From Dimorphilus gyrociliatus (Eukaryota; Animalia; Annelida), in NCBI GenBank assembly GCA_904063045.1, contig CAJFCJ010000014.1, positions 1,361,643 to 1,425,642 of the forward strand: a stretch of 64,000 nucleotides of DNA, written 5' to 3'. The notes beneath the pieces were generated by a model. The model made no database searches, was not told where the DNA came from, and was given only the letters and a program-made list of their open reading frames with translations. The translations under genes and the position numbers were made by a program. Below are positions 8,102 to 19,300 of the stretch, piece by piece. Numbering within the stretch: position 1 is the stretch's first letter; each line of letters opens with the position of its first letter.

Positions 8102-9318
8102 CTATACGTTGAATTTAGGATGCTCACGACTGTCTTTGCTTATTAGACTACATGGCGAGTTGGATCTTACTTGAAGTCCTTCCTCGACAAGGGCATCTCC
8201 TGTTAAATTATTTCATTAGAATAATGTATAAAATAGACGTATATATATATATTTATATGAGCATACCTATACTTGGGGCGATACTCGGTTCGGGAGATAT
8301 TGAGCACAGCGAGCCAACAGCAACCCTTTGAGAGAGAGATGGATTCGATGACCGCGTTTCAACAGTGTCTACAGTCACTGTTGTTGATGTTGCATCACTC
8401 ACATTAACAGTTTCACCGCTAGCTATAGATGTATTATCTCTCAATAAGTTTGGTCGATCTCTGCGAATGTTTGTAATTTGGCGATTACGATTGTTGGACA
8501 AGCGATTAGAAACCGCTTCTTCATAAGTAGGGGGCTGTCTGCCGTGGACTGAAGGGATATCGGCAAAAGCCATCAACGCCAATCTATCCAAATCAGTTTC
8601 GTAAGGTAGTCCATTTGAATAAGGATTGGAAGGTGTAGGTGGTTCAGATGGAATCGTACCCTCAGTAGGTCCGCACTGCTTGTGATATTTGAAGAAAACG
8701 CCTAATATGATTGCCACTAAAACAGTTAGTAATCCAAAAGCCACGGATACGATTATAGTTAATGATTGTCCAGTGAAAGTTTCCGGTATTCCTGCCGACG
8801 GTGTGGAGACTCGTTTCTGACATGTAGGAGGCACACTACTCCAACCCGAAGATGTGCATTTAAGATTAATATTACCATTTAATTCATAACCTGGATCACA
8901 TTCATAGGTAACTTGACTGCCAATACTATTTGGCTGACGTAAGCATTTAAGTTCACCATTTTCTTGAGTACAACTGAATTCCCAGTTTCCATTTTCAACT
9001 TCGGGAAGAGTTTCGCATTCAAATGTTCGTCTCCATGCATGGCAAAGGCGAACTTGATGGCTCTTGCCACACCAATTTATAGTTGTAGCTGTTAAATCCT
9101 CTGTATATCCTTCTGCACATCTCGTTTCCCATTTATTAGACTTCAAATATAGAGTTGTACCATCGTTGAAATTATATACCCCGACTTTATTACATTGAGC
9201 TATATTAAAATTTTATAAAATCATTCACTAAAATTGAAGGATTTTAATCAATTCTAAACTTACTTGATACTATTTCGAACAATACACATACAACCAATAG
9301 CTTATATAGGTTGGTCAT
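8102..9318 (-). CDS. Single-Sushi (CCP) type I membrane protein, SUSD4/SUSD6-like cytoplasmic tail
   Basis: Signal exon MTNLYKLLVVCVLFEIVS (ATG 9318) is followed by intron 9200-9263. Sushi domain CETLPEVENG...YECDPGYEL...CTSSGWSSVPPTC, then TM IIVSVAFGLLTVLVAIILGVFF, then LDRLALMAFA and PPTYEEAV (PPxY). A phase-compatible final exon 8102-8199 ends ...HPKFNV*. Confidence 0.75.
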
Positions 9319-10943
9319 TTTTCTTGCCTTATAGGCGTAGTTGCTAATTGTTCTCGTGTTTCTTGTTGATTTTTTGCGATGTTATATTCTAGCTGAATAT
9401 TCACGAAAAAATAACACGCTAGAATTTCTTTTAGGCAGATTATAGTGGTTTGATATTTAAAGGCAAATGTCTCACTGGTTGAAAGACTTAAATATGTTGC
9501 AGATGGCTACTTTCTGCGCAGAAAAACAATTCTTTCTACGTCCACCATATTTACTATCACGTGACAATCAGTTCTGTTTGTTTCTTACCCTAACCTGGTC
9601 CGTAGTGCGATTTTTAGCTGACATTTTGAAGCGGAACTCGAACTCAACTTTTTTTTTAATAAATGTAGCAATACTTATTTTGTTTATGATAGCATAAATA
9701 GTAAACAAAATACGACTTACAGTTGATAATAACGGAGGGAAGTTTAGTAAAAATGCTGAACTCATGAATCATCTTTCACTAAACCTGATTTCATTCTACA
9801 AAGTTAGAAATATTTGTCTTATGGCCTATTAATCTCTTTTTCCAAATGGCTAAGATAAAGTATATAGACTATAAAATTACCAAGAGCATTTTTGTTATCT
9901 AGGTTACCAATGAAGTACTTAACAATCTGACTTCATTATTTATGACAAGAAAACTTGGCAAAATATATATCTGAGTTGACGCTAACATCCTATTCTATAC
10001 AATATTATTAAAATACCTTTTTCTGTCCTAAATGTCGGCCCCCTTAGTGGATAATAAATACAAAGATATTGATTCTAAAGGGATATTATTATGCAGAAAT
10101 GTCTTATGGAAAAGTTGGAGTTTATTCTTTTTTTTAGTCTTTTTTCAAAATCTCCAAGGAATTTATGTTAGCACTTGTATATTCAAAGTAGTGATGAGGG
10201 AAATCACTATTTTTACCCATTGTAATTACCCCTATTGGTACTTTTCTTCATGGTCAATGCGTTTAAAAGAGTAAATACCGGGCTCTAGCTCCATCCAGGG
10301 TAAACTTAATTGTACGTTACATAATACCGTACCATACTAATTAAGACACAATTTTGAAAACTGTTTGTTTTTAACGCGGGTGAAGTTGAGCACTGTTTTA
10401 AAGTTTGTTTAATTCTTACTAGACTTAAAATGACTTGACTAATAAGTATATATCCTATAAGGATAGCGTCGGCGATATTTTCTACATTTTAAGTATTTAT
10501 TAAAAAGCCTTATTTCAGTATATAATTGAGCGATAATTTAATTAGATTATTTTAAAGAATCACGCGTTGAAACTTTCCACTTAAAAGTTTTTTAACACGT
10601 TTTAAGCTTTTTTATCCAGAGATTTTAATAAAATTTTATATTTTTTTATCGAAATTCCATTATTTATGTATCTTAAAAAGTGATTATAACAACGTTTAAT
10701 GAATCTTACGTAAGTCGCGTGCTAACAGACTATCTGGGGCAAATTTCTCCCCAAGTAACGTGTTGCTCAATAAAGTTTTACTAAGATAAAATAAACAAGT
10801 TAACCTTTTCAAAAAATTTTGTACTTTCTATAGATATTTGCTCCTATTTAGTAGTTCACGTTTTCTAAAAGGATATAAGAATATATCGCTTAGTATTTAT
10901 TGATTATCACTAAATGATTGATGTAATTTTACACTTTCAGAAC

Positions 10944-13900
10944 ATGAATAGCACAGATACAAAAAAAGAAAATTCTTGTTTGTATAGCCTATTTTTTATA
11001 AATGAGAATAAAACTGTAACGTTCTTATTAAATTGCAGATAATATACATAAAAAGTATCTGATTATATCAATATCTGTTTGCGTAGTTTTTGCAATAATG
11101 GTTTTTGTTTGTATTTACTGGCAATGGAAAAGATTCAAGAAGGTACAACAATTTATTTTCATTATATCCATATAGCATAAAAACCATTTAATGGTAATCA
11201 CTTCACAGAGAGTTAAATCAACGATAGAAAGAACCAATAGAAGCTCAGCAAATTCTCGCTGCAGCATTTCAGAAATTAGAGGTAAAGTTAATTAATGAGT
11301 AGAGAATCCTCTAAAAGTTATCATTAATTTTTATTACTATAATTTTCCAGCCTCGACAAGTGAAGGACGGAATACGGTTTGTTTTTTCAATTCTATAGAC
11401 TTACAATTCTCTCGATATCCTAATTACATAATATATATATACATTCAAATAACTTTTAAGACTCTCACTCCTGAAAGAAAGAAATTTGAACAAGCTATTA
11501 AAGCCCGTCAAAGGTAGAAGATATTTTCAATTAACGAAACTATTTTCAAAATAATTCACATTCCAGATTCAATGAGGAACGCGCAGCTAATAGGTTAATT
11601 GATTAGCTTCTATTTTGAGCAGACATAGTCTATATTTAATTATATGTAGCTTTAATTCTGTTTTTTTTTTCTACGTATACATAAGATCCGTTCATTGGGA
11701 ATCAACACCTAGAAAGCAAACTTCAGGAAATAAGTAAGTAGTGTCAAGTACAAGAACCAAAAAGCCATCTTTTCATACTTTTATTTGTATATTTTTTTCA
11801 GAAGTCCTCAGTCGACATATACTGTTCAAACACCTCATACACCTTGTCAATCGGGCGAGCTTGCTGTTGAAAAAGGAGACGTCCTTTCTCCGATTGAAGA
11901 GAATTCTGGTTGGTTAAAAGCAGAAAATGTTAGAACTGGTCAATTGGGTTGGATTCCAAAAACTTATGTATCAACATCTGTTAGTATAATATAAATACTA
12001 TTTCTCAAAATATTTAAAAACTTGACGAGTTTTTCCTAATAGGAGCTCTTTCCCTTACAGCTAAATGGCCAAAATTTAACTAGTCTCATAGTCGAAGATG
12101 GGCATTCAACTGGCGATGAATTAGATTTTGATACTGATGATTTAAATGTTAGAGGAGTAGGTATGTATCAAATTACAAGACTTTGGTTGAGTATAATCAT
12201 CAAGAATATTTATCTCTTAATTCCAGTATGTCAAGCTAAATATCCATTTCAAGCTCAACAACCAGGCGATTTATCATTCTCAAAAGGTCAAAAAATTCTT
12301 GCTTATCCTAATAAATTAATGGATAATGGTTGGTGTAGAGGATGTGTAAAAGAAAGCCACGGTTGGTTTCCCTGGGAATATATCGATGTTCTTCATCTAG
12401 ACAGAAGTGATGATACAACTAGTTTGTGGACAACTAATTTAGATGAAAGTATTAGAATTATGAAAGAATCTAGAAAGTTTAGCGAAGTTAGGAGTAAATG
12501 GACTGAAGTAATGAAAGATTTGAATGAGACTTTAGAAAAACCGTCACTTAAAATGCTCTCCTCAAAAACCTCTTTATTAAACAAACCATGTAGAGTTTTG
12601 AGAAAATCTTCCTTTTCTAGGTAATGTCTTTATGCTGTCTATTTTATCTTGTTATGTAATTCATAAATGTATTTATTAGCCGACCCAAAGTACCTCCGCC
12701 GAGACCTCCTTTACCGAATGTTAGTAGACTTGAACTAACAGGCGATAAGACATCTCTGGGTCGTATAGAAGCTTATACTCAAACTCCCATGTCTAGAAAT
12801 GTCGACATTCAAATGATACCGGTAAGTTTTAAGGATTCTTTCGAAATTCTTTGTTTGTTTAAAGGTAATTGTTTTAAATAGAAGAGACTTGAATTACAGA
12901 ATGACAAGATGGAAGAATCTCAAATGTCAAGTATAAGGACTTCATCTCAAGATTATGTAGAATATATAAAAACTCATTCAAAGACTACTTCTACACCAGA
13001 GAAATTTCAATATCAGAGAGCGGAGCATTTAAGGAATAGTAGTTCTTCTGCTTCTCCAAATACTCAATCTCTTGCTAAGTTCCTTATGGTAGAATATAAA
13101 AAATATCAAAGGGAAAAGAAGGATAAAAAAAAAGTGAGCGGTTCGTACCAGTCTTTAATTATGGATACAGGAATACTATCTGGTCGAATTCCTCGCGATC
13201 GATGTTCTGCAGAAGACTCGATGAATCTTTCAGAAATAGCACGAAATAATACAGAATTGGCTATAAAAGCAAAGAAGATTGCTGAACGACCACCAAGACC
13301 TCCTCCACCTCCCTTAAGTAGGCAAATTGGAATGAGCAATTTGGATAATTCTACCAAATTGAAGAAGCGACTCTTCGAAGAATCGAATGAAGCTAATTTA
13401 TCTAACTTTCCTGGACTTGTTAAAAAAGTTTCAGAGGATGGTAAGCAAAACCAGAATTCTTTACGATCACGTAGCTCTAGCCATGAGAGTATAAAGACAA
13501 CAAATAGCATAAAAAGCGCTAATTCTACGCAAATCCCTAAAGAGCCGATCGAATGGTCTAAAAATAATCAATGCTCACTTAAGACAGAAATAAGTTATCA
13601 AGAGACCGACGTTAAGAAAATACTTGCTGACAATGAAATCCAACAAAGGTTAAATGGAGGTGAAAAGATTACAACCACCGATAATTGGACGACTATTGAG
13701 AGTAATAATTTTGTTTTGGAATGTGCTTCTCAATGGGATAAGGCTCAAGCTAAAGAAAACGGATTTAATAATGAGGATGATGAAATCAGCCAAAAGCCGA
13801 TAACTGAACAATGGACAGAGGAAAACTGGAATAAAGCAGAAATACAGGAAAATGGATGGACTGAAAAACAAGACGTAGATAGGGTTGTTTTTCCCTACGA

Positions 13901-15714
13901 AACGGCTAAGGGTAACTGGTATCTCGGAAGCGAGAACGATGAGGGTGAGAATAGCGTTAGAGCAGAACAACAAAATGAAAATTGGGATGAGGTTGATGGA
14001 AAAAGTAACGAATGGGCTTCGAAGAAGGATGATCATTGGTTTGAAAATGAAAAGAACAAAGACAATTGGGAGAGAAATGACGAAGAATGCTCCACTGAGG
14101 AATGGCCAGATTACAAGATGCCGTGTGATGTTCATTTTACAATAGAACCGTGGAGGCCAGCATACGATAATGAAGATTTACCTAAAGACAATGGCTGGGA
14201 AACTGAGGATGAGGCTAAAAGTGTAAAAACATTAGACAGTAATGCTGTTCAACATGATACTGTTGTCGAGAATTGTAATGACGACCACAGCAGTCTTAAA
14301 AGCGAAAGAACAGCATATTCCTGGAGACCTCAATTACCATCCTTCGTCTCTAAGCAGATTAAACGCTTCGAAAATAAATTTTCAGAAGCTTTAACTCATG
14401 TTCATCGATCGCTTTCTAAGAATGAGTCAGATATTGACAGAGAATTGCAGAAATCACGTCAAGATAAATTGAAGACTTGTGGAGTATCTACACTAAATCA
14501 ATCAACTGAAAATACACCCTTAAACTTTGTTACACCGGCTGGCAGCCCAACGCAAATGAAGAAATTTCCAAAAGACAAAGAAGAGCTAAGGGAATATAAC
14601 GATTCAAACGTTAGCGGAATGAGGCATGATTGGGATGATCACGATGAACCAAGTGAGCATGATGGAGAAGTTCCCCAACAAGAGGTTGTGGAAGAATTAT
14701 GCTTTGAAGAGCAAGTAAAAAAGACAGAGTCGAGCAGGCTGTCTCTCAAAAGAAGGGAAGCTGATAATAGAAGAAGGGAAGACTGGTTTTGGGAACCTGA
14801 AAGCGCAACTGAACCAGAACGTAACGATTGGTATGACGAATCTGACAAAGAGATTGATTTGGTCGAAGAAAAATTGATAGAGGAAGAAAAAGTTGAAGTA
14901 CAAGAGAAGCCCCCACAAGCGGAAAATGATGTAGACGATCTAAAAGGCTTTAAAATGTTAGAAGAAAATGAGCTAAGGTGGGAGAAATTTCGTAAAACAA
15001 GAGCTATCTGGACAAAAGAATCCGATGAAAATAAACAGCAGGCTTGCAGTACTCACAGTATAAGTAAAGATACTAAAAGGTCAGCTACTTTAGATGATAG
15101 TCCTGATGAGGTTTGATATCTATAATATGGTTTTGTGGATTAAAAACATAACCTAACCATTCATTTTATAAATCAATAGCAAACAGATCACGATTATAGA
15201 GTACCTATAAATTCACATTATTCTGTTCCGAGTCGGCATATTTATAGAGTACCACCTAAGTACACTTATACGAAGCCGAATGTTCCTGAAAAAAGAGTAA
15301 GAAATCCATTGTCGAATTGTCGTCTTCCAGTTCCACCACCTCCGCTACCACCTCGAGATAGGTGAAATATTAATCCATATAAATAATGTCGTATTAAATT
15401 ATTATCTTATAAAAACATATATTTTTTTACAGAGCCGATAAAGTGCTGAAAAGTAAAATTTTAGTCGTTTGTACAGAGTTTCAGCCGGTGAATAAAGGTC
15501 AACTAAAATTGGAAAAGGGTCATTACGTTAAGGAATTAGGTCACGTTAGTATCAATAAATAAAAACTCTCTTAGTTTTAATGTTTATTTATTGTTCAAAA
15601 TTATAGAATCCGAATAGAAAGGGGTGGCTATATGGAATGAAATCGACTGGTGAAGCTGGATATTTCCCTGATAATTGCGTAAAGCCAGCTGTTATAAATA
15701 CATTTCGTATTTAA
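10944..15714 (+). CDS. Orphan single-pass membrane protein with three SH3 domains, proline-rich motifs and a long Trp/acidic disordered region
   Basis: Thirteen exons with mutually compatible phases. SH3 signatures: GELAVEKGD..SGWLKAENVRTGQLGWIPKTYV; AKYPFQAQQPGDLSFSKGQ..NGWCRG..GWFPWEYI; GQLKLEKGH..KGWLYGMKSTGEAGYFPDNCV. The TM exon is 11039-11142. The 735-aa ORF 12909-15116 is one internal exon. Confidence 0.7.
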
Positions 15715-16281
15715 CAAAGTATTTAATTTAATTATTTGATGACAAAAGCCGAAAGAAAAGAAACAAAGTTGAATTTTTTCTTCATCGTTTTTATTATTAC
15801 TTTGTTGAGATTCTAGTTTATCATGTTTATTGACGATAATAACTATATATACTTTTTGTTGCCTATATATATAACTATATATTTGACTTGTATTGTATAT
15901 CGATTGATGTGCTTATCTATTAGCTTGAAAAAGGAAAAATATGAATAAACATTAATTAAAAAAAATATAATTTATTATGGTCTCTAATTGAGAGATATTG
16001 TAGCTTTGAGGTTGTTTGTCCTCTCCTTACTACTTCCGATTGATAAATATTCTCCTAACTAAAGAGTAGAATACTAGAATATACTTGATCTAATGTTATC
16101 GATAATGTACATTCTTCATTATCTTCTTGGCTTCTACATAATTTAAATACCTTATTTGTTTGTCACTTTATCTTCTGTCTCTTTATGACCTTGTTTTTTT
16201 TTTGTTTATTTTAATTCGAACCAAACAATCAATTGAGATGATGACAATTGATTATTTGAAAAGATTCTCCAAAAATACTCC

Positions 16282-16314
16282 GTATATATATGTATATATA
16301 TATATAGATATATA
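16282..16314 (+). repeat. Imperfect (TA)n microsatellite abutting the coiled-coil gene ATG
   Basis: A TA-dinucleotide run with two single-base interruptions, ending directly at the ATG at 16314. Confidence 0.75.
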
Positions 16315-19300
16315 TGGATCCTCCAAATTATGAAGGTACTTTGGAAGATTGTGACATCTTCCCTCAAATTCCTTTCTATTTTAACGAAAATCAAAACATA
16401 GAAGAATTACTTCTGGATGATCATCTCACTTCGAAATTGAAGGAGAAAACTACACAAGAACAGAATTTACGTGGAAATGATGACATCTTCCCTTTAGAAT
16501 TAGAACAATTAGAAAGGTTCGAAGAAGGTAATGATATCAACAAAGATTTACAAGCAAATGGAAGATTACGTAATCGCAATCGAATAACAGAACATTGCAA
16601 TAGCGTTGTCAGGCCATTGGAAAAAGATTTAATGATAGAAAAAAGGGAAAATAGAATGATGTTGATCGGAGAAAATGATTTGCTACCTAACGAAAATGAT
16701 GTAACGACGGAAGAGGGGAAAAATCGACTAATAAATTTTACCAAGTCGGAAGACTATAGACAAATGTATAGTATATTATCGAAAGCGTACAGCAAACAAT
16801 CCCTAGAGTCTCAGGGTATTTATTCACCGTTTGCCAAGTGTGATACGGATCGTAAATCGCCTACTAAATCGATAGGAAATGGTAATGATTCCAATTCACA
16901 TGTAATATCTAAAAACCAATCGGATTCGATAACGGATGATAAAGAAGAGAGAGTATCCTCATCTGAAATTGAAAAGAAGGATTCATTGATTTCCCATATC
17001 GGTGACGACCTTTATAAATACGCCAATTCATGGGAAAGCAACGTAAATCGAAGATATTATCAAGAACCAGTAAGAGCGACACCAAATTTGATTGAGATTA
17101 CTGAAAAGTCGTCCTCTAGAAATTATTTATTGGATTCGGAGATTACAGAAAATTCTTTATCGATCGATAAGAATAACGTCCCTTCTTTAACAGAATATAA
17201 ATCAACCCCAAAATCAGTGGGCAGTAATAAAAGCCATGAACGTGAATTGGAGTTGCTATGCTATCAGAATAGAGGAGGCGCAGGAATAGAAAAAGGTAGA
17301 AAAGAGGAAGATGAAAGCAAGAAAAAATCCTACAATAACAAAGAATTTAATGTAAAAAAGGTAAGGAAACTCATTAATTAATTAATTAATTAATTACTTA
17401 AATAACTATGTCTTTATAACGAACCACGACGACAGATCAATTTGGATAAGTATTTTCATTACACTAAGAAGTTTATAGAAGAAAAGAATAAATATAAGAA
17501 TAAACTATCTAACAGAGGTATCAATAGTTGGACGTCGTCGTTGGATAATCATGTTCTCTCTCAATCCCCCGAAGGGAAAAAGTCTACTGATCATTTCTCC
17601 TTCGCCTCCATACCGAAACCTGACGAAACTTCTTCTCCGCTAATGCATCTTTTTACAACAAAAATGGTTCAATGGCAGAGAAGAATCAACAAGGATGTAG
17701 ATGATAAGGTTATCAGTGAATTTTTCGATATGGACTCTGATAAGAGTTTCAAGAACGTACAAGAGGATAAGAATATCAATTCTAATAATAACATTAAGGG
17801 CGAAAAGGGAATGGATGAACTGGAAATCGCGAAAAAGTATCCGGACGTTAAAGTTGCTAGAGAATTTGCTGAGATTTTAAGAAATTTCTCGCCTAAAATA
17901 GAGTGAATTCCTTTTTTCTTTTTCCTTTATCTTCAATTCCCTATAATCATTATTCTTTCTATATATTAATGAGGATAAAAAAATACTCAATTGTATATAA
18001 ATCTTACGATTAATAACGCTTTTCTTTCCGAATAAAGATCGACGACGAGAGACGGTAATAATTTTAATATGAATAATAGACGCCCAACGAACGCCAAAGT
18101 TAATAGAAGGTCACGATCGCACGAGGAAAATAATTCTGAGCACAATTCGAGCACTAGTACTAGAAATAAGGATACGATAAGAGGGCGTTCAGTTGATACT
18201 CTTTCAACGGCTATCGATGAAATTCGATGCTGCTCAAACATTTTCCCATTCAATCGATTAATTGTCAGGAAACGGAAGAGGAAGAGCGATAAGAAGAGAA
18301 GGAGGAAGAGAGTGAAAGGAAAGGGTGCTTCTAGTTCGAAAACAAAGAATTTGAGGGATGTTAGTACGTCATTCGATAAGATAAAGACTACTGTATTACA
18401 TTATCAGGATAAAGTGGAAAAATTGAACTCTGAAGTAGGTGGAAAGATTACGTAACTAACGTAATTGACTGCCATTTCTTTTGTTCTGTAAACAGCTTGA
18501 ACTTCGTAAAGAGATTGAGAAATTAAACAATTCAAAGATAAATAATGACGTATTTAAATTGACAGAGGAAAATGTTCAATTAAGGCAGATGTTAAAAGAT
18601 GTAATCTTTCAAATGAAAGAAGATGGAAATTGCAATTATTCTTTAGACGCTTCTCCTCTGAGAATATCTAATAGTTAGTGAAACAGCTTTTCTCATAAAT
18701 TTAATTTATAATAGATAAATTTTTTCTTTTCCTCTTAAGAACAATCTTCCGATATCATTACTCCAATAATAGATTATAATCCAGTCTTAGGGTATATTTA
18801 TTTAAGTAGGCCTAAAGCAATTTCTAATCCGTAGTTTTTAACATTTTTGAAGGTCATCTGAAGATAATAATCAAAAAGATGAGTAAGTATAAAGAAGATC
18901 AAGCTTTGTTTTTTTCCACCGTTCTAGAGTGAATCATATACATTTTACCCATTTTCTTCGAAAGATTAATCAGGAAGAATGAAATTGAAGGGAAAGGCGA
19001 GAACTTTAAAATCTTGCCTGAGAATGAAATGAACAGCGATTCACATATCATTAGGAAATGCGAGATAGATGAACATGAAAGTCAACTGCATTTGCAGGAG
19101 AAAACTATTGATGTTTTGAGGCAAAGAAACGAAGAATTATGCCAAAAGTGTCTTTTGCTTCAGAATGAAAAATATACATTAAAAAATCAAATTGACTGTT
19201 TTGAAATTATGGTAAAATTTGATTACGTCATTCCATAATCCCTCTAGTTAATCTTACATTCCTTAAAAGAGAAATTCAGAGTTATCCGAAGGATTAAAGG

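What the first reader, a model, noticed from the sequence alone, without database searches (positions are those of the whole stretch)
10944..15714. Type III transmembrane adaptor carrying three SH3 domains, an architecture I cannot match to a known metazoan family
Seen: the exons join in compatible phases from ATG 10944 to stop 15714 and give MNSTDTKKENSYNIHKK-YLIISISVCVVFAIMVFVCIYWQW-KRFKKR. This is a short N-terminus with an N-S-T sequon, one TM helix and a basic stop-transfer cluster. Two SH3 domains, about 800 disordered residues and a third C-terminal SH3 follow. Known: Nout/Cin transmembrane adaptors (LAT, PAG) carry Tyr motifs rather than SH3 domains, and TM+SH3 scaffolds are known mainly from fungi (Fus1, Sho1). 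Inference: a membrane-tethered scaffold for endocytic or actin machinery, possibly lineage-specific.
Basis: partly seen in the sequence, partly recalled or inferred. Interest (0 to 1): 0.75.

Follow-up and report, generated by a model that had tools for sequence, protein, structure and literature searches.

The report
Membrane-anchored three-SH3 scaffold gene
This small worm's gene does encode a protein with a tiny outside stub, one membrane-spanning helix and three SH3 docking domains inside the cell. It is a cut-down member of a family, for which I found no published study, that is shared with snails, clams and another worm, where the outside part is a long, probably sugar-coated stalk.

Summary
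Fifteen exons (10944-15714, + strand) join through 14 GT-AG introns in compatible phases. The product has 1263 aa, or 1269 with an in-frame alternative acceptor. It has an 11-residue first exon (M-N-S-T...), one strong hydrophobic helix followed by a basic cluster, two Pfam-significant SH3 domains, about 940 disordered residues and a C-terminal SH3 split by an intron.

A second dinophilid-like assembly (L001) has every exon in the same order. Synonymous sites are saturated and dN/dS is 0.02-0.14, including the transmembrane (TM) exon (0.04). The start codon, the N-x-T sequon and the stop are kept.

The gene is not lineage-specific. It is the orthologue of an unnamed family in molluscs and the annelid Owenia. 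That family has no signal peptide, a 180-780 aa Ser/Thr-rich N-terminal part, a TM helix, three SH3 domains, a Pro-rich linker and a C-terminal SH3. Six intron positions and phases are shared with Gigantopelta, four of them also with Owenia. Domain profiles and a tree match SH3#1 to SH3-b and SH3#2 to SH3-c.

The dinophilid lineage lost the ectodomain and SH3-a and gained a Trp-acidic array.

Function is inferred only: a membrane-tethered scaffold with intersectin-like SH3 domains. I found no paper on the family. The joined protein was never built or searched.

The parts
10944..10977 (+). Exon 1: start codon and 11-residue N-terminal stub with an N-x-T sequon at residues 2-4. Ends in phase 1.
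   Evidence: The ATG, the sequon (N-S-T here, N-G-T in L001) and the donor T|GTTTGT are conserved in L001, with an in-frame 6-nt indel. In-frame stops lie 10-11 codons upstream in both species. L001 has no upstream in-frame ATG.
11039..11142 (+). Exon 2: transmembrane helix (residues about 18-41) plus the basic cluster K-R-F-K-K. Phase 1 in, phase 0 out.
   Evidence: Kyte-Doolittle 19-residue mean 3.16. 78% aa identity and dN/dS 0.04 against L001. Same phases and same 3' end, right after the basic cluster, as the TM exons of Owenia and Gigantopelta.
11209..11733 (+). Exons 3-7: five juxtamembrane micro-exons (11209-11281, 11351-11376, 11461-11513, 11567-11593, 11686-11733), about 75 residues with no domain.
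   Evidence: All are present in L001 with AG/GT kept and only in-frame length changes. dN/dS is 0.04-0.06 where it could be computed.
11802..11979 (+). Exon 8: SH3 domain 1, equivalent to family domain SH3-b. Ends in phase 0.
   Evidence: Pfam SH3_1 E 1.9e-8. 95% identity to L001. Profile score 40.1 bits against SH3-b and 26.6 against SH3-a. Groups with SH3-b in the tree (SH-aLRT 80). A phase-0 intron follows it, as in Owenia and Gigantopelta.
12061..12160 (+). Exon 9: acidic linker exon, phase 0 to phase 1.
   Evidence: Same phases as the SH3-b/SH3-c linker exon of Owenia and Gigantopelta. 81% identity to L001.
12227..12620 (+). Exon 10: SH3 domain 2 (equivalent to SH3-c) plus an 80-residue tail with two predicted helices.
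   Evidence: Pfam SH3_1 E 2.1e-9. 51% identity to Owenia SH3-c, sharing A-Q-Q-x-G-D-L-S-F and D-N-G-W-x-R-G-C. Profile score 55.4 bits against SH3-c. A phase-1 intron lies three residues before the A-x-Y motif in all three species. The tail is 96% identical in L001 but was found only in two dinophilid-like fragments among 1.84 billion proteins. The helix prediction has low confidence (pLDDT 47).
12680..12821 (+). Exon 11: proline-rich motif 1 (R-P-K-V-P-P-P-R-P-P-L-P, 12681-12716).
   Evidence: The motif is conserved in L001. The donor GTAAGT at 12822 was checked.
12900..15110 (+). Exon 12: 737-residue disordered exon (in-frame alternative acceptor at 12882). It carries proline-rich motif 2 (13287-13322) and 21 Trp in acidic or polar contexts (13554-15011).
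   Evidence: Acceptor 12900 aligns with the L001 acceptor. 48% identity to P0001/L001 by tblastn, 51% in the global alignment. Trp is the best-kept residue, 18 of 21. Trp content is 2.8% against 0-0.9% in the linkers of other family members. No Pfam domain.
15180..15361 (+). Exon 13: proline-rich motif 3 (R-L-P-V-P-P-P-P-L-P-P-R, 15321-15356). Ends in phase 2.
   Evidence: The motif is conserved in L001. The phase-2 junction about 9 residues before the last SH3 is the same as in Gigantopelta.
15433..15714 (+). Exons 14 (15433-15544) and 15 (15607-15714): C-terminal SH3 domain 3 (equivalent to SH3-d), split by a phase-0 intron. Stop codon at 15712-15714.
   Evidence: SH3_9 E 1.7e-4 on exon 15 alone. 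89% identity to L001 with the stop conserved. The intron splits the domain at the same place as in Gigantopelta (K-E-[LI]-x-x | five residues, then G-W). The last exon has 35 codons here and 36 there. Exon 15 scores best against the SH3-d profile, by a small margin (21.1 against 18.7 bits).

Best explanation
This is a real, single-copy gene for a single-pass, signal-peptide-less (type III, N-outside/C-inside) membrane protein. Its cytoplasmic part is a multivalent scaffold. It contains two adjacent SH3 domains, three Arg-flanked polyproline motifs, a long disordered region studded with conserved Trp residues, and a C-terminal SH3 domain.

It is the dinophilid orthologue of an unnamed lophotrochozoan family found in many molluscs and in Owenia. 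In that family a long Ser/Thr-rich (mucin-like) N-terminal ectodomain precedes the same TM helix, then three SH3 domains (a, b, c), a Pro-rich linker and a C-terminal SH3-d.

In this lineage the first coding exon shrank from about 0.8-1.25 kb to 34 nt, leaving only a stub that carries a sequon. The symmetric (phase 1-1) SH3-a exon was lost. The linker acquired a Trp-acidic array.

Shown here: the gene structure, purifying selection, the domain content and the orthology.

Inferred:
- Topology, from the positive-inside rule and from the fact that SH3 domains are cytosolic.
- Palmitoylation of the Cys near the cytosolic end of the helix.
- The mechanism. The protein would tether intersectin-like SH3 domains at a membrane, where they collect proline-rich partners such as endocytic or actin regulators. 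Its own polyproline motifs would allow auto-inhibition or self-networking.
For: Gene model: 14 GT-AG introns with compatible phases.

Selection and conservation:
- All exons are colinear in L001. pS is about 0.7 and pN 0.02-0.2; dN/dS is 0.04 for the TM exon.
- The start codon, the sequon and the stop are conserved.

Domains: Pfam SH3 hits. There is a single hydrophobic segment (Kyte-Doolittle 3.16) and the C flank is more basic than the N flank.

Family:
- 16 of the 150 best hits for SH3#2 among 1.84 billion proteins have an internal TM helix followed by a basic cluster and then 3-4 SH3 domains. The named ones come from molluscs, Owenia, a sponge and a choanoflagellate.
- A 6.4-kb mRNA-like contig from a scallop-like sample carries the whole TM+SH3 reading frame, with an in-frame stop upstream of its ATG and no signal peptide.

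Orthology:
- Single-domain BLAST best hits, position-specific profiles (b 40.1, c 55.4, d 21.1 bits) and the tree agree.
- Shared intron positions and phases, compared with Owenia and Gigantopelta: TM exon phase 1 to 0, ending right after the basic cluster; phase 0 after SH3-b; linker exon phase 0 to 1; phase 1 three residues before SH3-c.
- Compared with Gigantopelta only: phase 2 before SH3-d and a phase-0 split inside SH3-d.
- No second copy in the genome. Intersectin lies at a separate locus on contig C6.
- R-x-P-P-P-P type motifs are shared with the family linkers.
Against: - I had no transcript evidence for this species. The joined protein was deliberately not built, so no whole-protein topology predictor or exact-match transcript look-up was run.
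- SH3#1 matches SH3-a best by BLAST in heterobranch gastropods, so the a/b assignment rests on profiles, a weakly supported tree and intron phase.
- Tree support is only 80-91 SH-aLRT on 50 columns.
- The juxtamembrane micro-exons and the SH3#2 tail have no detectable counterpart outside dinophilids.
- No classical endocytic motifs (NPF, DPF/DPW, clathrin box) are present.
- By eye, SH3#1 and SH3#3 lack some canonical ligand-groove aromatic residues, so not all three domains need bind PxxP.
- Subcellular location, glycosylation, palmitoylation and partners are all untested.
Confidence: 0.72

Rival explanations
1. Gene-model artefact. The ATG exon and the TM exon are UTR, belong to another gene or are chance open frames, and the real product is a soluble multi-SH3 protein that starts further downstream.
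For: No RNA evidence for this species was available to me. Exons 1 and 3-7 are very short (26-73 nt), so they could be forced to fit. A possible acceptor lies 1-3 nt upstream of the ATG in both species, so an upstream non-coding exon may exist.
Against: The TM exon is 78% identical at protein level while synonymous sites are saturated (dN/dS 0.04). All micro-exons keep AG/GT and the reading frame in L001. The TM exon has the same phases and boundaries as the TM exons of annotated Owenia and Gigantopelta genes. In a scallop-like mRNA-like contig the TM helix and the SH3 domains lie in one reading frame.
Confidence: 0.04
2. It is the orthologue of a known soluble multi-SH3 adaptor (intersectin, dynamin-binding protein/Tuba, SH3D19 or SH3RF) that picked up a TM exon in this lineage.
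For: NCBI auto-names some family members 'intersectin-1 isoform' or 'dynamin-binding protein-like'. A word search with the Owenia protein retrieves mainly intersectins.
Against: There are no EH, DH, PH, C2, BAR or RING domains. The Dimorphilus intersectin orthologue is a separate locus on contig C6. The best single-domain hits and profile scores favour the TM family over intersectin SH3 A-E: 55 against at most 32 bits for SH3#2, and 40 against at most 29 bits for SH3#1. The TM exon is shared with molluscs and Owenia, so it is not a dinophilid novelty. The multi-SH3 locus on contig C4, which scored higher with the Owenia query, has no TM helix in its single 592-aa frame and has a different build.
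Confidence: 0.05
3. The architecture is as described, but the protein is anchored in an internal membrane (ER, Golgi or endosome) or works as a residual signalling stub, rather than as a plasma-membrane endocytic or actin scaffold. For example, the Trp-acidic array could recruit kinesin light chain, Arp2/3, COPI or adaptor appendages.
For: Trp is the best conserved residue of the disordered exon, 18 of 21 kept against 51% overall. The array is lineage-specific. Classical endocytic motifs are absent. Loss of the ectodomain argues that outside sensing is dispensable here.
Against: The residues flanking the Trp positions vary between the two species, so no defined motif class is met. The family's mucin-like ectodomain and the PDZ-ligand-like C-termini in molluscs suggest a cell-surface location for the ancestral protein.
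Confidence: 0.18

Closest known systems
Unnamed lophotrochozoan TM + 4xSH3 proteins. Examples: XP_041356580.1 (Gigantopelta aegis), XP_067664002.1 (Haliotis asinina), XP_071125571.1 (Mytilus edulis), CAH1776870.1 (Owenia fusiformis). All are uncharacterised or auto-named.
   Same: No signal peptide, and often an N-x-S/T sequon within the first 5 residues. One TM helix with a Cys near each end, followed by a basic cluster. SH3-b, SH3-c and the C-terminal SH3-d. R-x-P-P-P-P motifs in a long disordered linker. Six intron positions and phases are shared.
   Different: The window protein has a 17-residue outside stub instead of a 180-780 aa Ser/Thr-rich ectodomain. It lacks SH3-a and the D-L-W juxtamembrane motif of molluscs. 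Its linker is Trp-acidic rather than Pro-rich. It has a private 80-residue helical tail after SH3-c. It ends in F-R-I rather than S/T-x-V/L/A.
Intersectin (ITSN1/2, Dap160), SH3 domains A-E
   Same: These are the nearest characterised SH3 relatives of the family by sequence. Both have a multivalent SH3 array. This suggests proline-rich endocytic or actin partners.
   Different: Intersectin is soluble and has EH domains, a coiled coil and DH-PH-C2. None of these is present here, and the worm has its own intersectin gene elsewhere.
Fungal Fus1 (O-glycosylated single-pass protein with a cytoplasmic SH3) and Sho1 (four TM helices plus SH3)
   Same: Membrane-embedded proteins that present SH3 domains on the cytoplasmic face. 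Fus1 also has a Ser/Thr-rich outside part, like the mollusc members.
   Different: No detectable sequence relationship beyond the SH3 fold. Each has one SH3 domain. Sho1 has four TM helices. This is an analogy, not membership.
Vertebrate transmembrane adaptor proteins (LAT, PAG/Cbp, NTAL, LIME)
   Same: Type III topology with a very short outside stub, juxtamembrane Cys residues and a long disordered cytoplasmic tail that acts as a scaffold.
   Different: Those proteins recruit partners through phosphotyrosine motifs and have no folded domains. This one carries its own SH3 domains and polyproline motifs.
Tks4/Tks5 (SH3PXD2B/A)
   Same: Membrane-targeted scaffolds with several SH3 domains separated by long disordered, proline-motif-bearing linkers.
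   Different: Tks proteins bind the membrane through a PX domain rather than a TM helix. No PX domain is present here.

Membership tests
Unnamed lophotrochozoan TM + multi-SH3 family (molluscs, Owenia) | Single internal TM helix immediately followed by a basic cluster, encoded by its own exon (phase 1 in, phase 0 out) | tested here: met
   Exon 2 is 104 nt, phase 1 to 0, and ends after K-R-F-K-K. The Owenia exon is 128 nt and the Gigantopelta exon 110 nt, with the same phases and the same end point.
Unnamed lophotrochozoan TM + multi-SH3 family (molluscs, Owenia) | No N-terminal signal peptide; N-x-S/T sequon within the first few residues | tested here: met
   The first exon has no hydrophobic residues and carries N-S-T at residues 2-4 (N-G-T in L001). 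Owenia, Patella, Potamilus, Mytilus, Nucella and Babylonia start with a sequon at residues 3-5. The scallop-like mRNA-like contig has an in-frame stop upstream of its ATG.
Unnamed lophotrochozoan TM + multi-SH3 family (molluscs, Owenia) | Long Ser/Thr-rich (mucin-like) N-terminal ectodomain | tested here: not met
   Only about 17 residues precede the helix here (19 in L001). Relatives have 180-780 residues or more with 27-56% Ser+Thr. I read this as secondary loss within exon 1.
Unnamed lophotrochozoan TM + multi-SH3 family (molluscs, Owenia) | Three membrane-proximal SH3 domains (a, b, c) | tested here: not met
   Only two are present. They score best as b (40.1 bits) and c (55.4 bits). In Owenia and Gigantopelta SH3-a lies on a phase 1-1 exon, which can be lost without a frameshift.
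Unnamed lophotrochozoan TM + multi-SH3 family (molluscs, Owenia) | Conserved intron positions around SH3-b, the linker and SH3-c | tested here: met
   Phase 0 after SH3-b, linker exon phase 0 to 1, and phase 1 three residues before A-x-Y-P/S in all three species.
Unnamed lophotrochozoan TM + multi-SH3 family (molluscs, Owenia) | C-terminal SH3-d about 10 residues from the end, split by a phase-0 intron | tested here: met
   Same split point and a preceding phase-2 junction as in Gigantopelta. The last exon has 35 codons here and 36 there. The profile preference for SH3-d is weak (21.1 against 18.7 bits), because the two halves were scored separately.
Unnamed lophotrochozoan TM + multi-SH3 family (molluscs, Owenia) | C-terminal S/T-x-V/L/A (class I PDZ-ligand-like) ending | tested here: not met
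   The protein ends ...T-F-R-I here and in L001. Of the 24 mollusc and Owenia sequences listed, 15 end in S/T-x-V/L/A/C.
Intersectin | EH domains, coiled coil, five SH3 domains, DH-PH-C2 in long forms | tested here: not met
   No such Pfam hits on any exon. The intersectin orthologue maps to G000 contig C6, 4934306-4943829.
Transmembrane adaptor proteins (LAT/PAG type) | Short outside stub, TM helix, juxtamembrane Cys, multiple Tyr-based SH2-docking motifs, no folded domains | tested here: not met
   The stub, the helix and the Cys residues are present. But the tail carries folded SH3 domains, and only one conserved Y-x-x-hydrophobic motif was found in the 737-residue disordered exon.
Fungal Sho1 / Fus1 | Sho1: four TM helices plus one C-terminal SH3. 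Fus1: type I O-glycosylated protein with one SH3. | tested here: not met
   There is one hydrophobic segment only and three SH3 domains. The only fungal-family hit is a sub-threshold Psg1 match over the TM helix (17.7 bits against a 30.1 cutoff).

The most novel reading that the evidence does not exclude
The window gene may be the minimal member of an old, so far undescribed animal family, possibly pre-animal. In this family a signal-peptide-less mucin-like stalk, one TM helix and an intersectin-like SH3 array form a surface-to-cortex scaffold.

A sponge protein (Oscarella) and a choanoflagellate protein (Choanoeca) have the same order of parts. The sponge's last SH3 groups with SH3-d and its third with the SH3-c group. 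No vertebrate or ecdysozoan protein with this build appeared among the 150 best hits.

The dinophilid form would then be a natural deletion experiment. It would show that the cytoplasmic scaffold stays under strong selection without the ectodomain, and that it has been rewired with a Trp-acidic array.
Probability: 0.3. Interest if true: 0.7.

Novelty: new variant of a known kind. Interest (0 to 1): 0.55.

Why it matters
Animal membrane adaptors are known to scaffold through phosphotyrosine motifs, and multi-SH3 scaffolds are known as soluble proteins. A transmembrane protein that carries its own SH3 array has, to my knowledge and in the literature searches run here, been described only in fungi.

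This gene shows that such proteins exist as a conserved, selected family in molluscs and annelids. It offers a compact, single-copy member of 1263 aa in 4.8 kb in a laboratory-tractable miniature annelid.

It also gives a clear case of genome compaction acting inside a gene. An ectodomain exon of about 1 kb was reduced to 34 nt, while the start codon, the sequon and the intron phase were kept.

It raises a cell-biological question as well: how are N-terminal domains of 200-780 residues moved across the membrane without a signal peptide in the relatives?

Tried and rejected
- Word search with the 743-aa disordered exon found only one relative, the L001 species.
- AlphaFold2 on exon 10 with a 3-row alignment gave pLDDT 47. 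That is too low for a fold search, so only the secondary structure was noted.
- ESM Atlas on the disordered exon gave nothing above 0.78. On a mollusc member it only returned that member's own cluster.
- Rfam on the conserved non-coding block upstream gave no match.
- I looked for SH3-d in Owenia in the DNA from 12 kb to the end of the 18.9-kb locus, which includes the 2-kb flank beyond the gene. Only a chance 11-residue hit appeared. The Owenia model probably lacks its true 3' end.
- I checked whether the higher-scoring multi-SH3 locus on contig C4 is the true orthologue. It was rejected: no TM helix in its single 592-aa frame, and an alanine-rich tandem repeat at the N-terminus.
- Scans for NPF, DPF/DPW, FxDxF, clathrin-box, strict W-acidic and GW motifs found none conserved as a defined class.
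- The E-S-T-P-R-K hexamer shared between exon 7 and the Owenia exon that precedes SH3-a was noted but not relied on.
- Five literature searches found no paper on the family.
- All searches were done exon by exon, by reference.

Full report
**Setting.** The window is AT-rich eukaryotic DNA (about 30-36% G+C) with introns of 59-92 nt. Earlier notes of this scan name the genome as the miniature annelid Dimorphilus gyrociliatus. I did not verify the name. The assembly has 77.9 Mb in 349 contigs.

**1. The observation.**
- I re-derived the exon chain from the sequence. There are 15 exons between 10944 and 15714 on the + strand and 14 GT-AG introns, with phases compatible throughout.
- Two details differ from a naive reading. 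Exon 11 ends at 12821 (donor GTAAGT). Exon 12 has two in-frame acceptors, 12882 and 12900, and only 12900 has a counterpart in the related species.
- The coding length is 3792 nt, giving 1263 aa, or 1269 aa with the upstream acceptor.
- Exon 2 holds the only hydrophobic segment of the gene (19-residue Kyte-Doolittle mean 3.16; every other exon is 0.6 or less). It is flanked by a net charge of +2 on the N side and +6 on the C side.
- Pfam finds SH3_1 in exon 8 (E 1.9e-8) and in exon 10 (E 2.1e-9). It finds the C-terminal half of an SH3 in the last exon (SH3_9, E 1.7e-4). The first half of that domain lies on exon 14.
- The joined protein was never assembled, searched, folded or run through a topology predictor.

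**2. Is it a real gene?**
- The 743-aa disordered exon has a single relative among 5.8 billion clustered proteins. This is a 754-aa open frame on an 8.4-kb Logan contig (SRR23372229, L001), at 48% identity.
- Exon-by-exon tblastn and DNA alignment show that L001 carries all 15 exons in the same order. Amino-acid identities are: TM exon 78%, SH3#1 95%, SH3#2 plus tail 96%, last two exons 89%.
- Between the two species synonymous sites are saturated (pS about 0.55-0.9) while pN is 0.02-0.2. dN/dS is 0.02-0.14, and 0.04 for the TM exon.
- Length differences in exons 1 and 4 are in frame: 6 nt and 3 nt.
- The ATG, an N-x-T sequon at residues 2-4 (N-S-T here, N-G-T in L001), the exon-1 donor and the stop codon are all conserved. 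In-frame stops lie 10-11 codons upstream of the ATG in both species, and L001 has no upstream in-frame ATG.
- A third taxon is represented by a 109-aa fragment (P0003, 92% identical over the exon 10 tail).
- The gene is single-copy in its genome.

**3. What family?**
- A full HMMER scan of 1.84 billion representatives with exon 10 showed that the 80-residue tail after SH3#2 occurs only in the two dinophilid-like fragments. The SH3 part has many relatives.
- Sixteen of the 150 best hits have a strong internal TM helix followed by a basic cluster and then 3-4 SH3 domains.
- Look-ups name them as unannotated or auto-named proteins. They come from gastropods and bivalves (Gigantopelta, Haliotis, Patella, Batillaria, Nucella, Elysia, Aplysia, Mytilus, Argopecten, Dreissena, Sinanodonta), the annelid Owenia, the sponge Oscarella and the choanoflagellate Choanoeca. 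A word search from the Gigantopelta protein added more molluscs.
- The common plan is:
  - no signal peptide, and often a sequon at residues 3-5;
  - 180-780 residues or more with 27-56% Ser+Thr;
  - a TM helix with a Cys near each end;
  - an R/K cluster;
  - SH3-a, SH3-b and SH3-c;
  - a 500-900 residue Pro-rich linker with R-x-P-P-P-P motifs;
  - SH3-d about 10 residues from the C-terminus;
  - frequently an S/T-x-V/L/A ending.
- A 6.4-kb contig from a scallop-like sample carries the whole 1649-aa frame uninterrupted, with an in-frame stop before its ATG. I take it to be an mRNA. It puts the TM helix and the SH3 domains in one message and confirms the absence of a signal peptide.

**4. Orthology.**
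- By best single domain, SH3#2 is closest to the third SH3 of Owenia (51% identity, 58.9 bits). They share A-Q-Q-x-G-D-L-S-F and D-N-G-W-x-R-G-C.
- Profiles built separately from the a, b, c and d domains of 13 family members score as follows:

| Query | Best family profile | Next best family profile | Best intersectin A-E profile |
|---|---|---|---|
| SH3#1 (exon 8) | b, 40.1 bits | a, 26.6 bits | 28.6 bits or less |
| SH3#2 (exon 10) | c, 55.4 bits | a, 43.6 bits | 32.4 bits or less |
| Last exon (exon 15) | d, 21.1 bits | b, 18.7 bits | 16.6 bits or less |

- A 120-domain tree agrees, with modest support: SH3#1 groups with SH3-b (SH-aLRT 80) and SH3#2 with the SH3-c group (87).
- The strongest evidence is gene structure. 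I mapped the Owenia and Gigantopelta proteins onto their loci (L002, L003).
- In the window gene, Owenia and Gigantopelta alike:
  - the first coding exon ends in phase 1 a few residues before the helix;
  - the TM exon (104, 128 and 110 nt) ends in phase 0 right after the basic cluster;
  - a phase-0 intron follows SH3-b;
  - the linker exon runs from phase 0 to phase 1;
  - a phase-1 intron lies three residues before the A-x-Y motif of SH3-c.
- With Gigantopelta the match continues. A phase-2 junction lies about 9 residues before SH3-d, and a phase-0 intron splits SH3-d at the same residue. The last exon has 35 codons here and 36 there.
- In both relatives the whole ectodomain lies in exon 1 (1249 nt in Owenia, 811 nt in Gigantopelta), where the window gene has 34 nt.
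- In both relatives SH3-a lies on a symmetric phase 1-1 exon, which can be lost without a frameshift.
- The worm's intersectin orthologue lies elsewhere, on contig C6. A higher-scoring multi-SH3 locus on contig C4 has no TM helix in its single 592-aa frame and a different build.

**5. Lineage-specific features.**
- The disordered exon has 21 Trp (2.8%) in acidic or polar surroundings. Eighteen of the 21 are kept in L001, against 51% identity overall.
- Family linkers elsewhere have 0-0.9% Trp and 8-21% Pro.
- The residues flanking the Trp positions vary, and no classical endocytic motif is conserved.
- All three Arg-flanked polyproline motifs (exons 11, 12 and 13) are kept.
- By eye, SH3#2 keeps the canonical ligand-groove aromatic residues. 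SH3#1 and SH3#3 have lost some of them. This is my reading, not a test.

**6. Mechanism.**
- Shown: a selected, single-pass, SH3-bearing protein that lacks a signal peptide.
- Inferred from the positive-inside rule and the cytosolic nature of SH3 domains: N-out/C-in topology. The sequon lies 16-18 residues from the helix, which from general knowledge is about the minimum distance for glycosylation.
- Inferred from kinship with intersectin SH3 domains and from the protein's own polyproline motifs: a membrane-tethered multivalent scaffold that gathers proline-rich partners and may self-associate or auto-inhibit.
- The role of the Trp array is open.

**7. Novelty.** Five literature searches found no description of a metazoan TM-SH3 family or of this gene. 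The architecture is therefore present in databases, and I found no study of it. The sponge and choanoflagellate look-alikes hint at an older origin, but this rests on architecture and a weakly supported tree.

**Verdict.** This is a derived orthologue of an uncharacterised lophotrochozoan family of membrane-anchored multi-SH3 proteins. Interest is moderate (0.55).

Noticed in passing
window 10191-10411 (also 9540-9591 and 9781-9880): Non-coding blocks upstream of the gene are 71-87% identical to L001 (L001 711-930, 15-62 and 284-385). All six frames contain stops and there is no Rfam match. They could be a shared promoter, 5'UTR exons of the two divergently transcribed genes, or an unknown RNA.
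   Followed up: partly
window 8253-9146 (- strand): The neighbouring gene on the opposite strand ends in an open frame that, by eye, looks like a Cys-rich (sushi-like) module, a TM helix and a Ser/Pro-rich tail. It was not scanned against any family library. It is transcribed away from the SH3 gene, which limits the room for any upstream ectodomain exon.
   Followed up: no
window 16314-17381 (+) and L001 6692-7678: The next gene downstream (a 355-aa open frame, acidic and Ser-rich) is also present downstream in L001, so local gene order is conserved between the two species.
   Followed up: no
window 12882 vs 12900: Two in-frame acceptors lie 18 nt apart at the start of the large exon. Only 12900 is conserved in L001. 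This could be an alternative 6-codon insertion.
   Followed up: partly
L004 5316-7094 (G000 contig C4, about 1488315-1490093): A soluble multi-SH3 gene has an N-terminus built from a run of near-identical 17-residue alanine-rich tandem repeats (A-A-F-A-A-N-S-G-L-[IL]-Q-K-A-P-E...). These are followed by an R-P-P-R-P-P-P-P-K motif and SH3 domains, all in one exon.
   Followed up: no
P0055 (Choanoeca flexa) and P0036 (Oscarella pearsei): Both proteins have a TM helix followed by three or four SH3 domains. The choanoflagellate protein has a Cu/Zn superoxide-dismutase-like domain in its outside part (Pfam Sod_Cu, E 8.5e-13). The sponge protein has a signal-peptide-like N-terminus and a C-terminal SH3 that groups with SH3-d.
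   Followed up: partly
L002 (Owenia fusiformis locus), 12880-16898: The annotated 3' end of the Owenia gene (two tiny exons, with no C-terminal SH3) looks like a mis-annotation. SH3-d was not found from 12 kb to the end of the locus, including 2 kb beyond the gene.
   Followed up: partly
mollusc family members: Molluscs share a D-L-W-[VML]-[NS] motif 10-25 residues after the TM helix. It is absent from Owenia and from the dinophilids. Its function is unknown.
   Followed up: no
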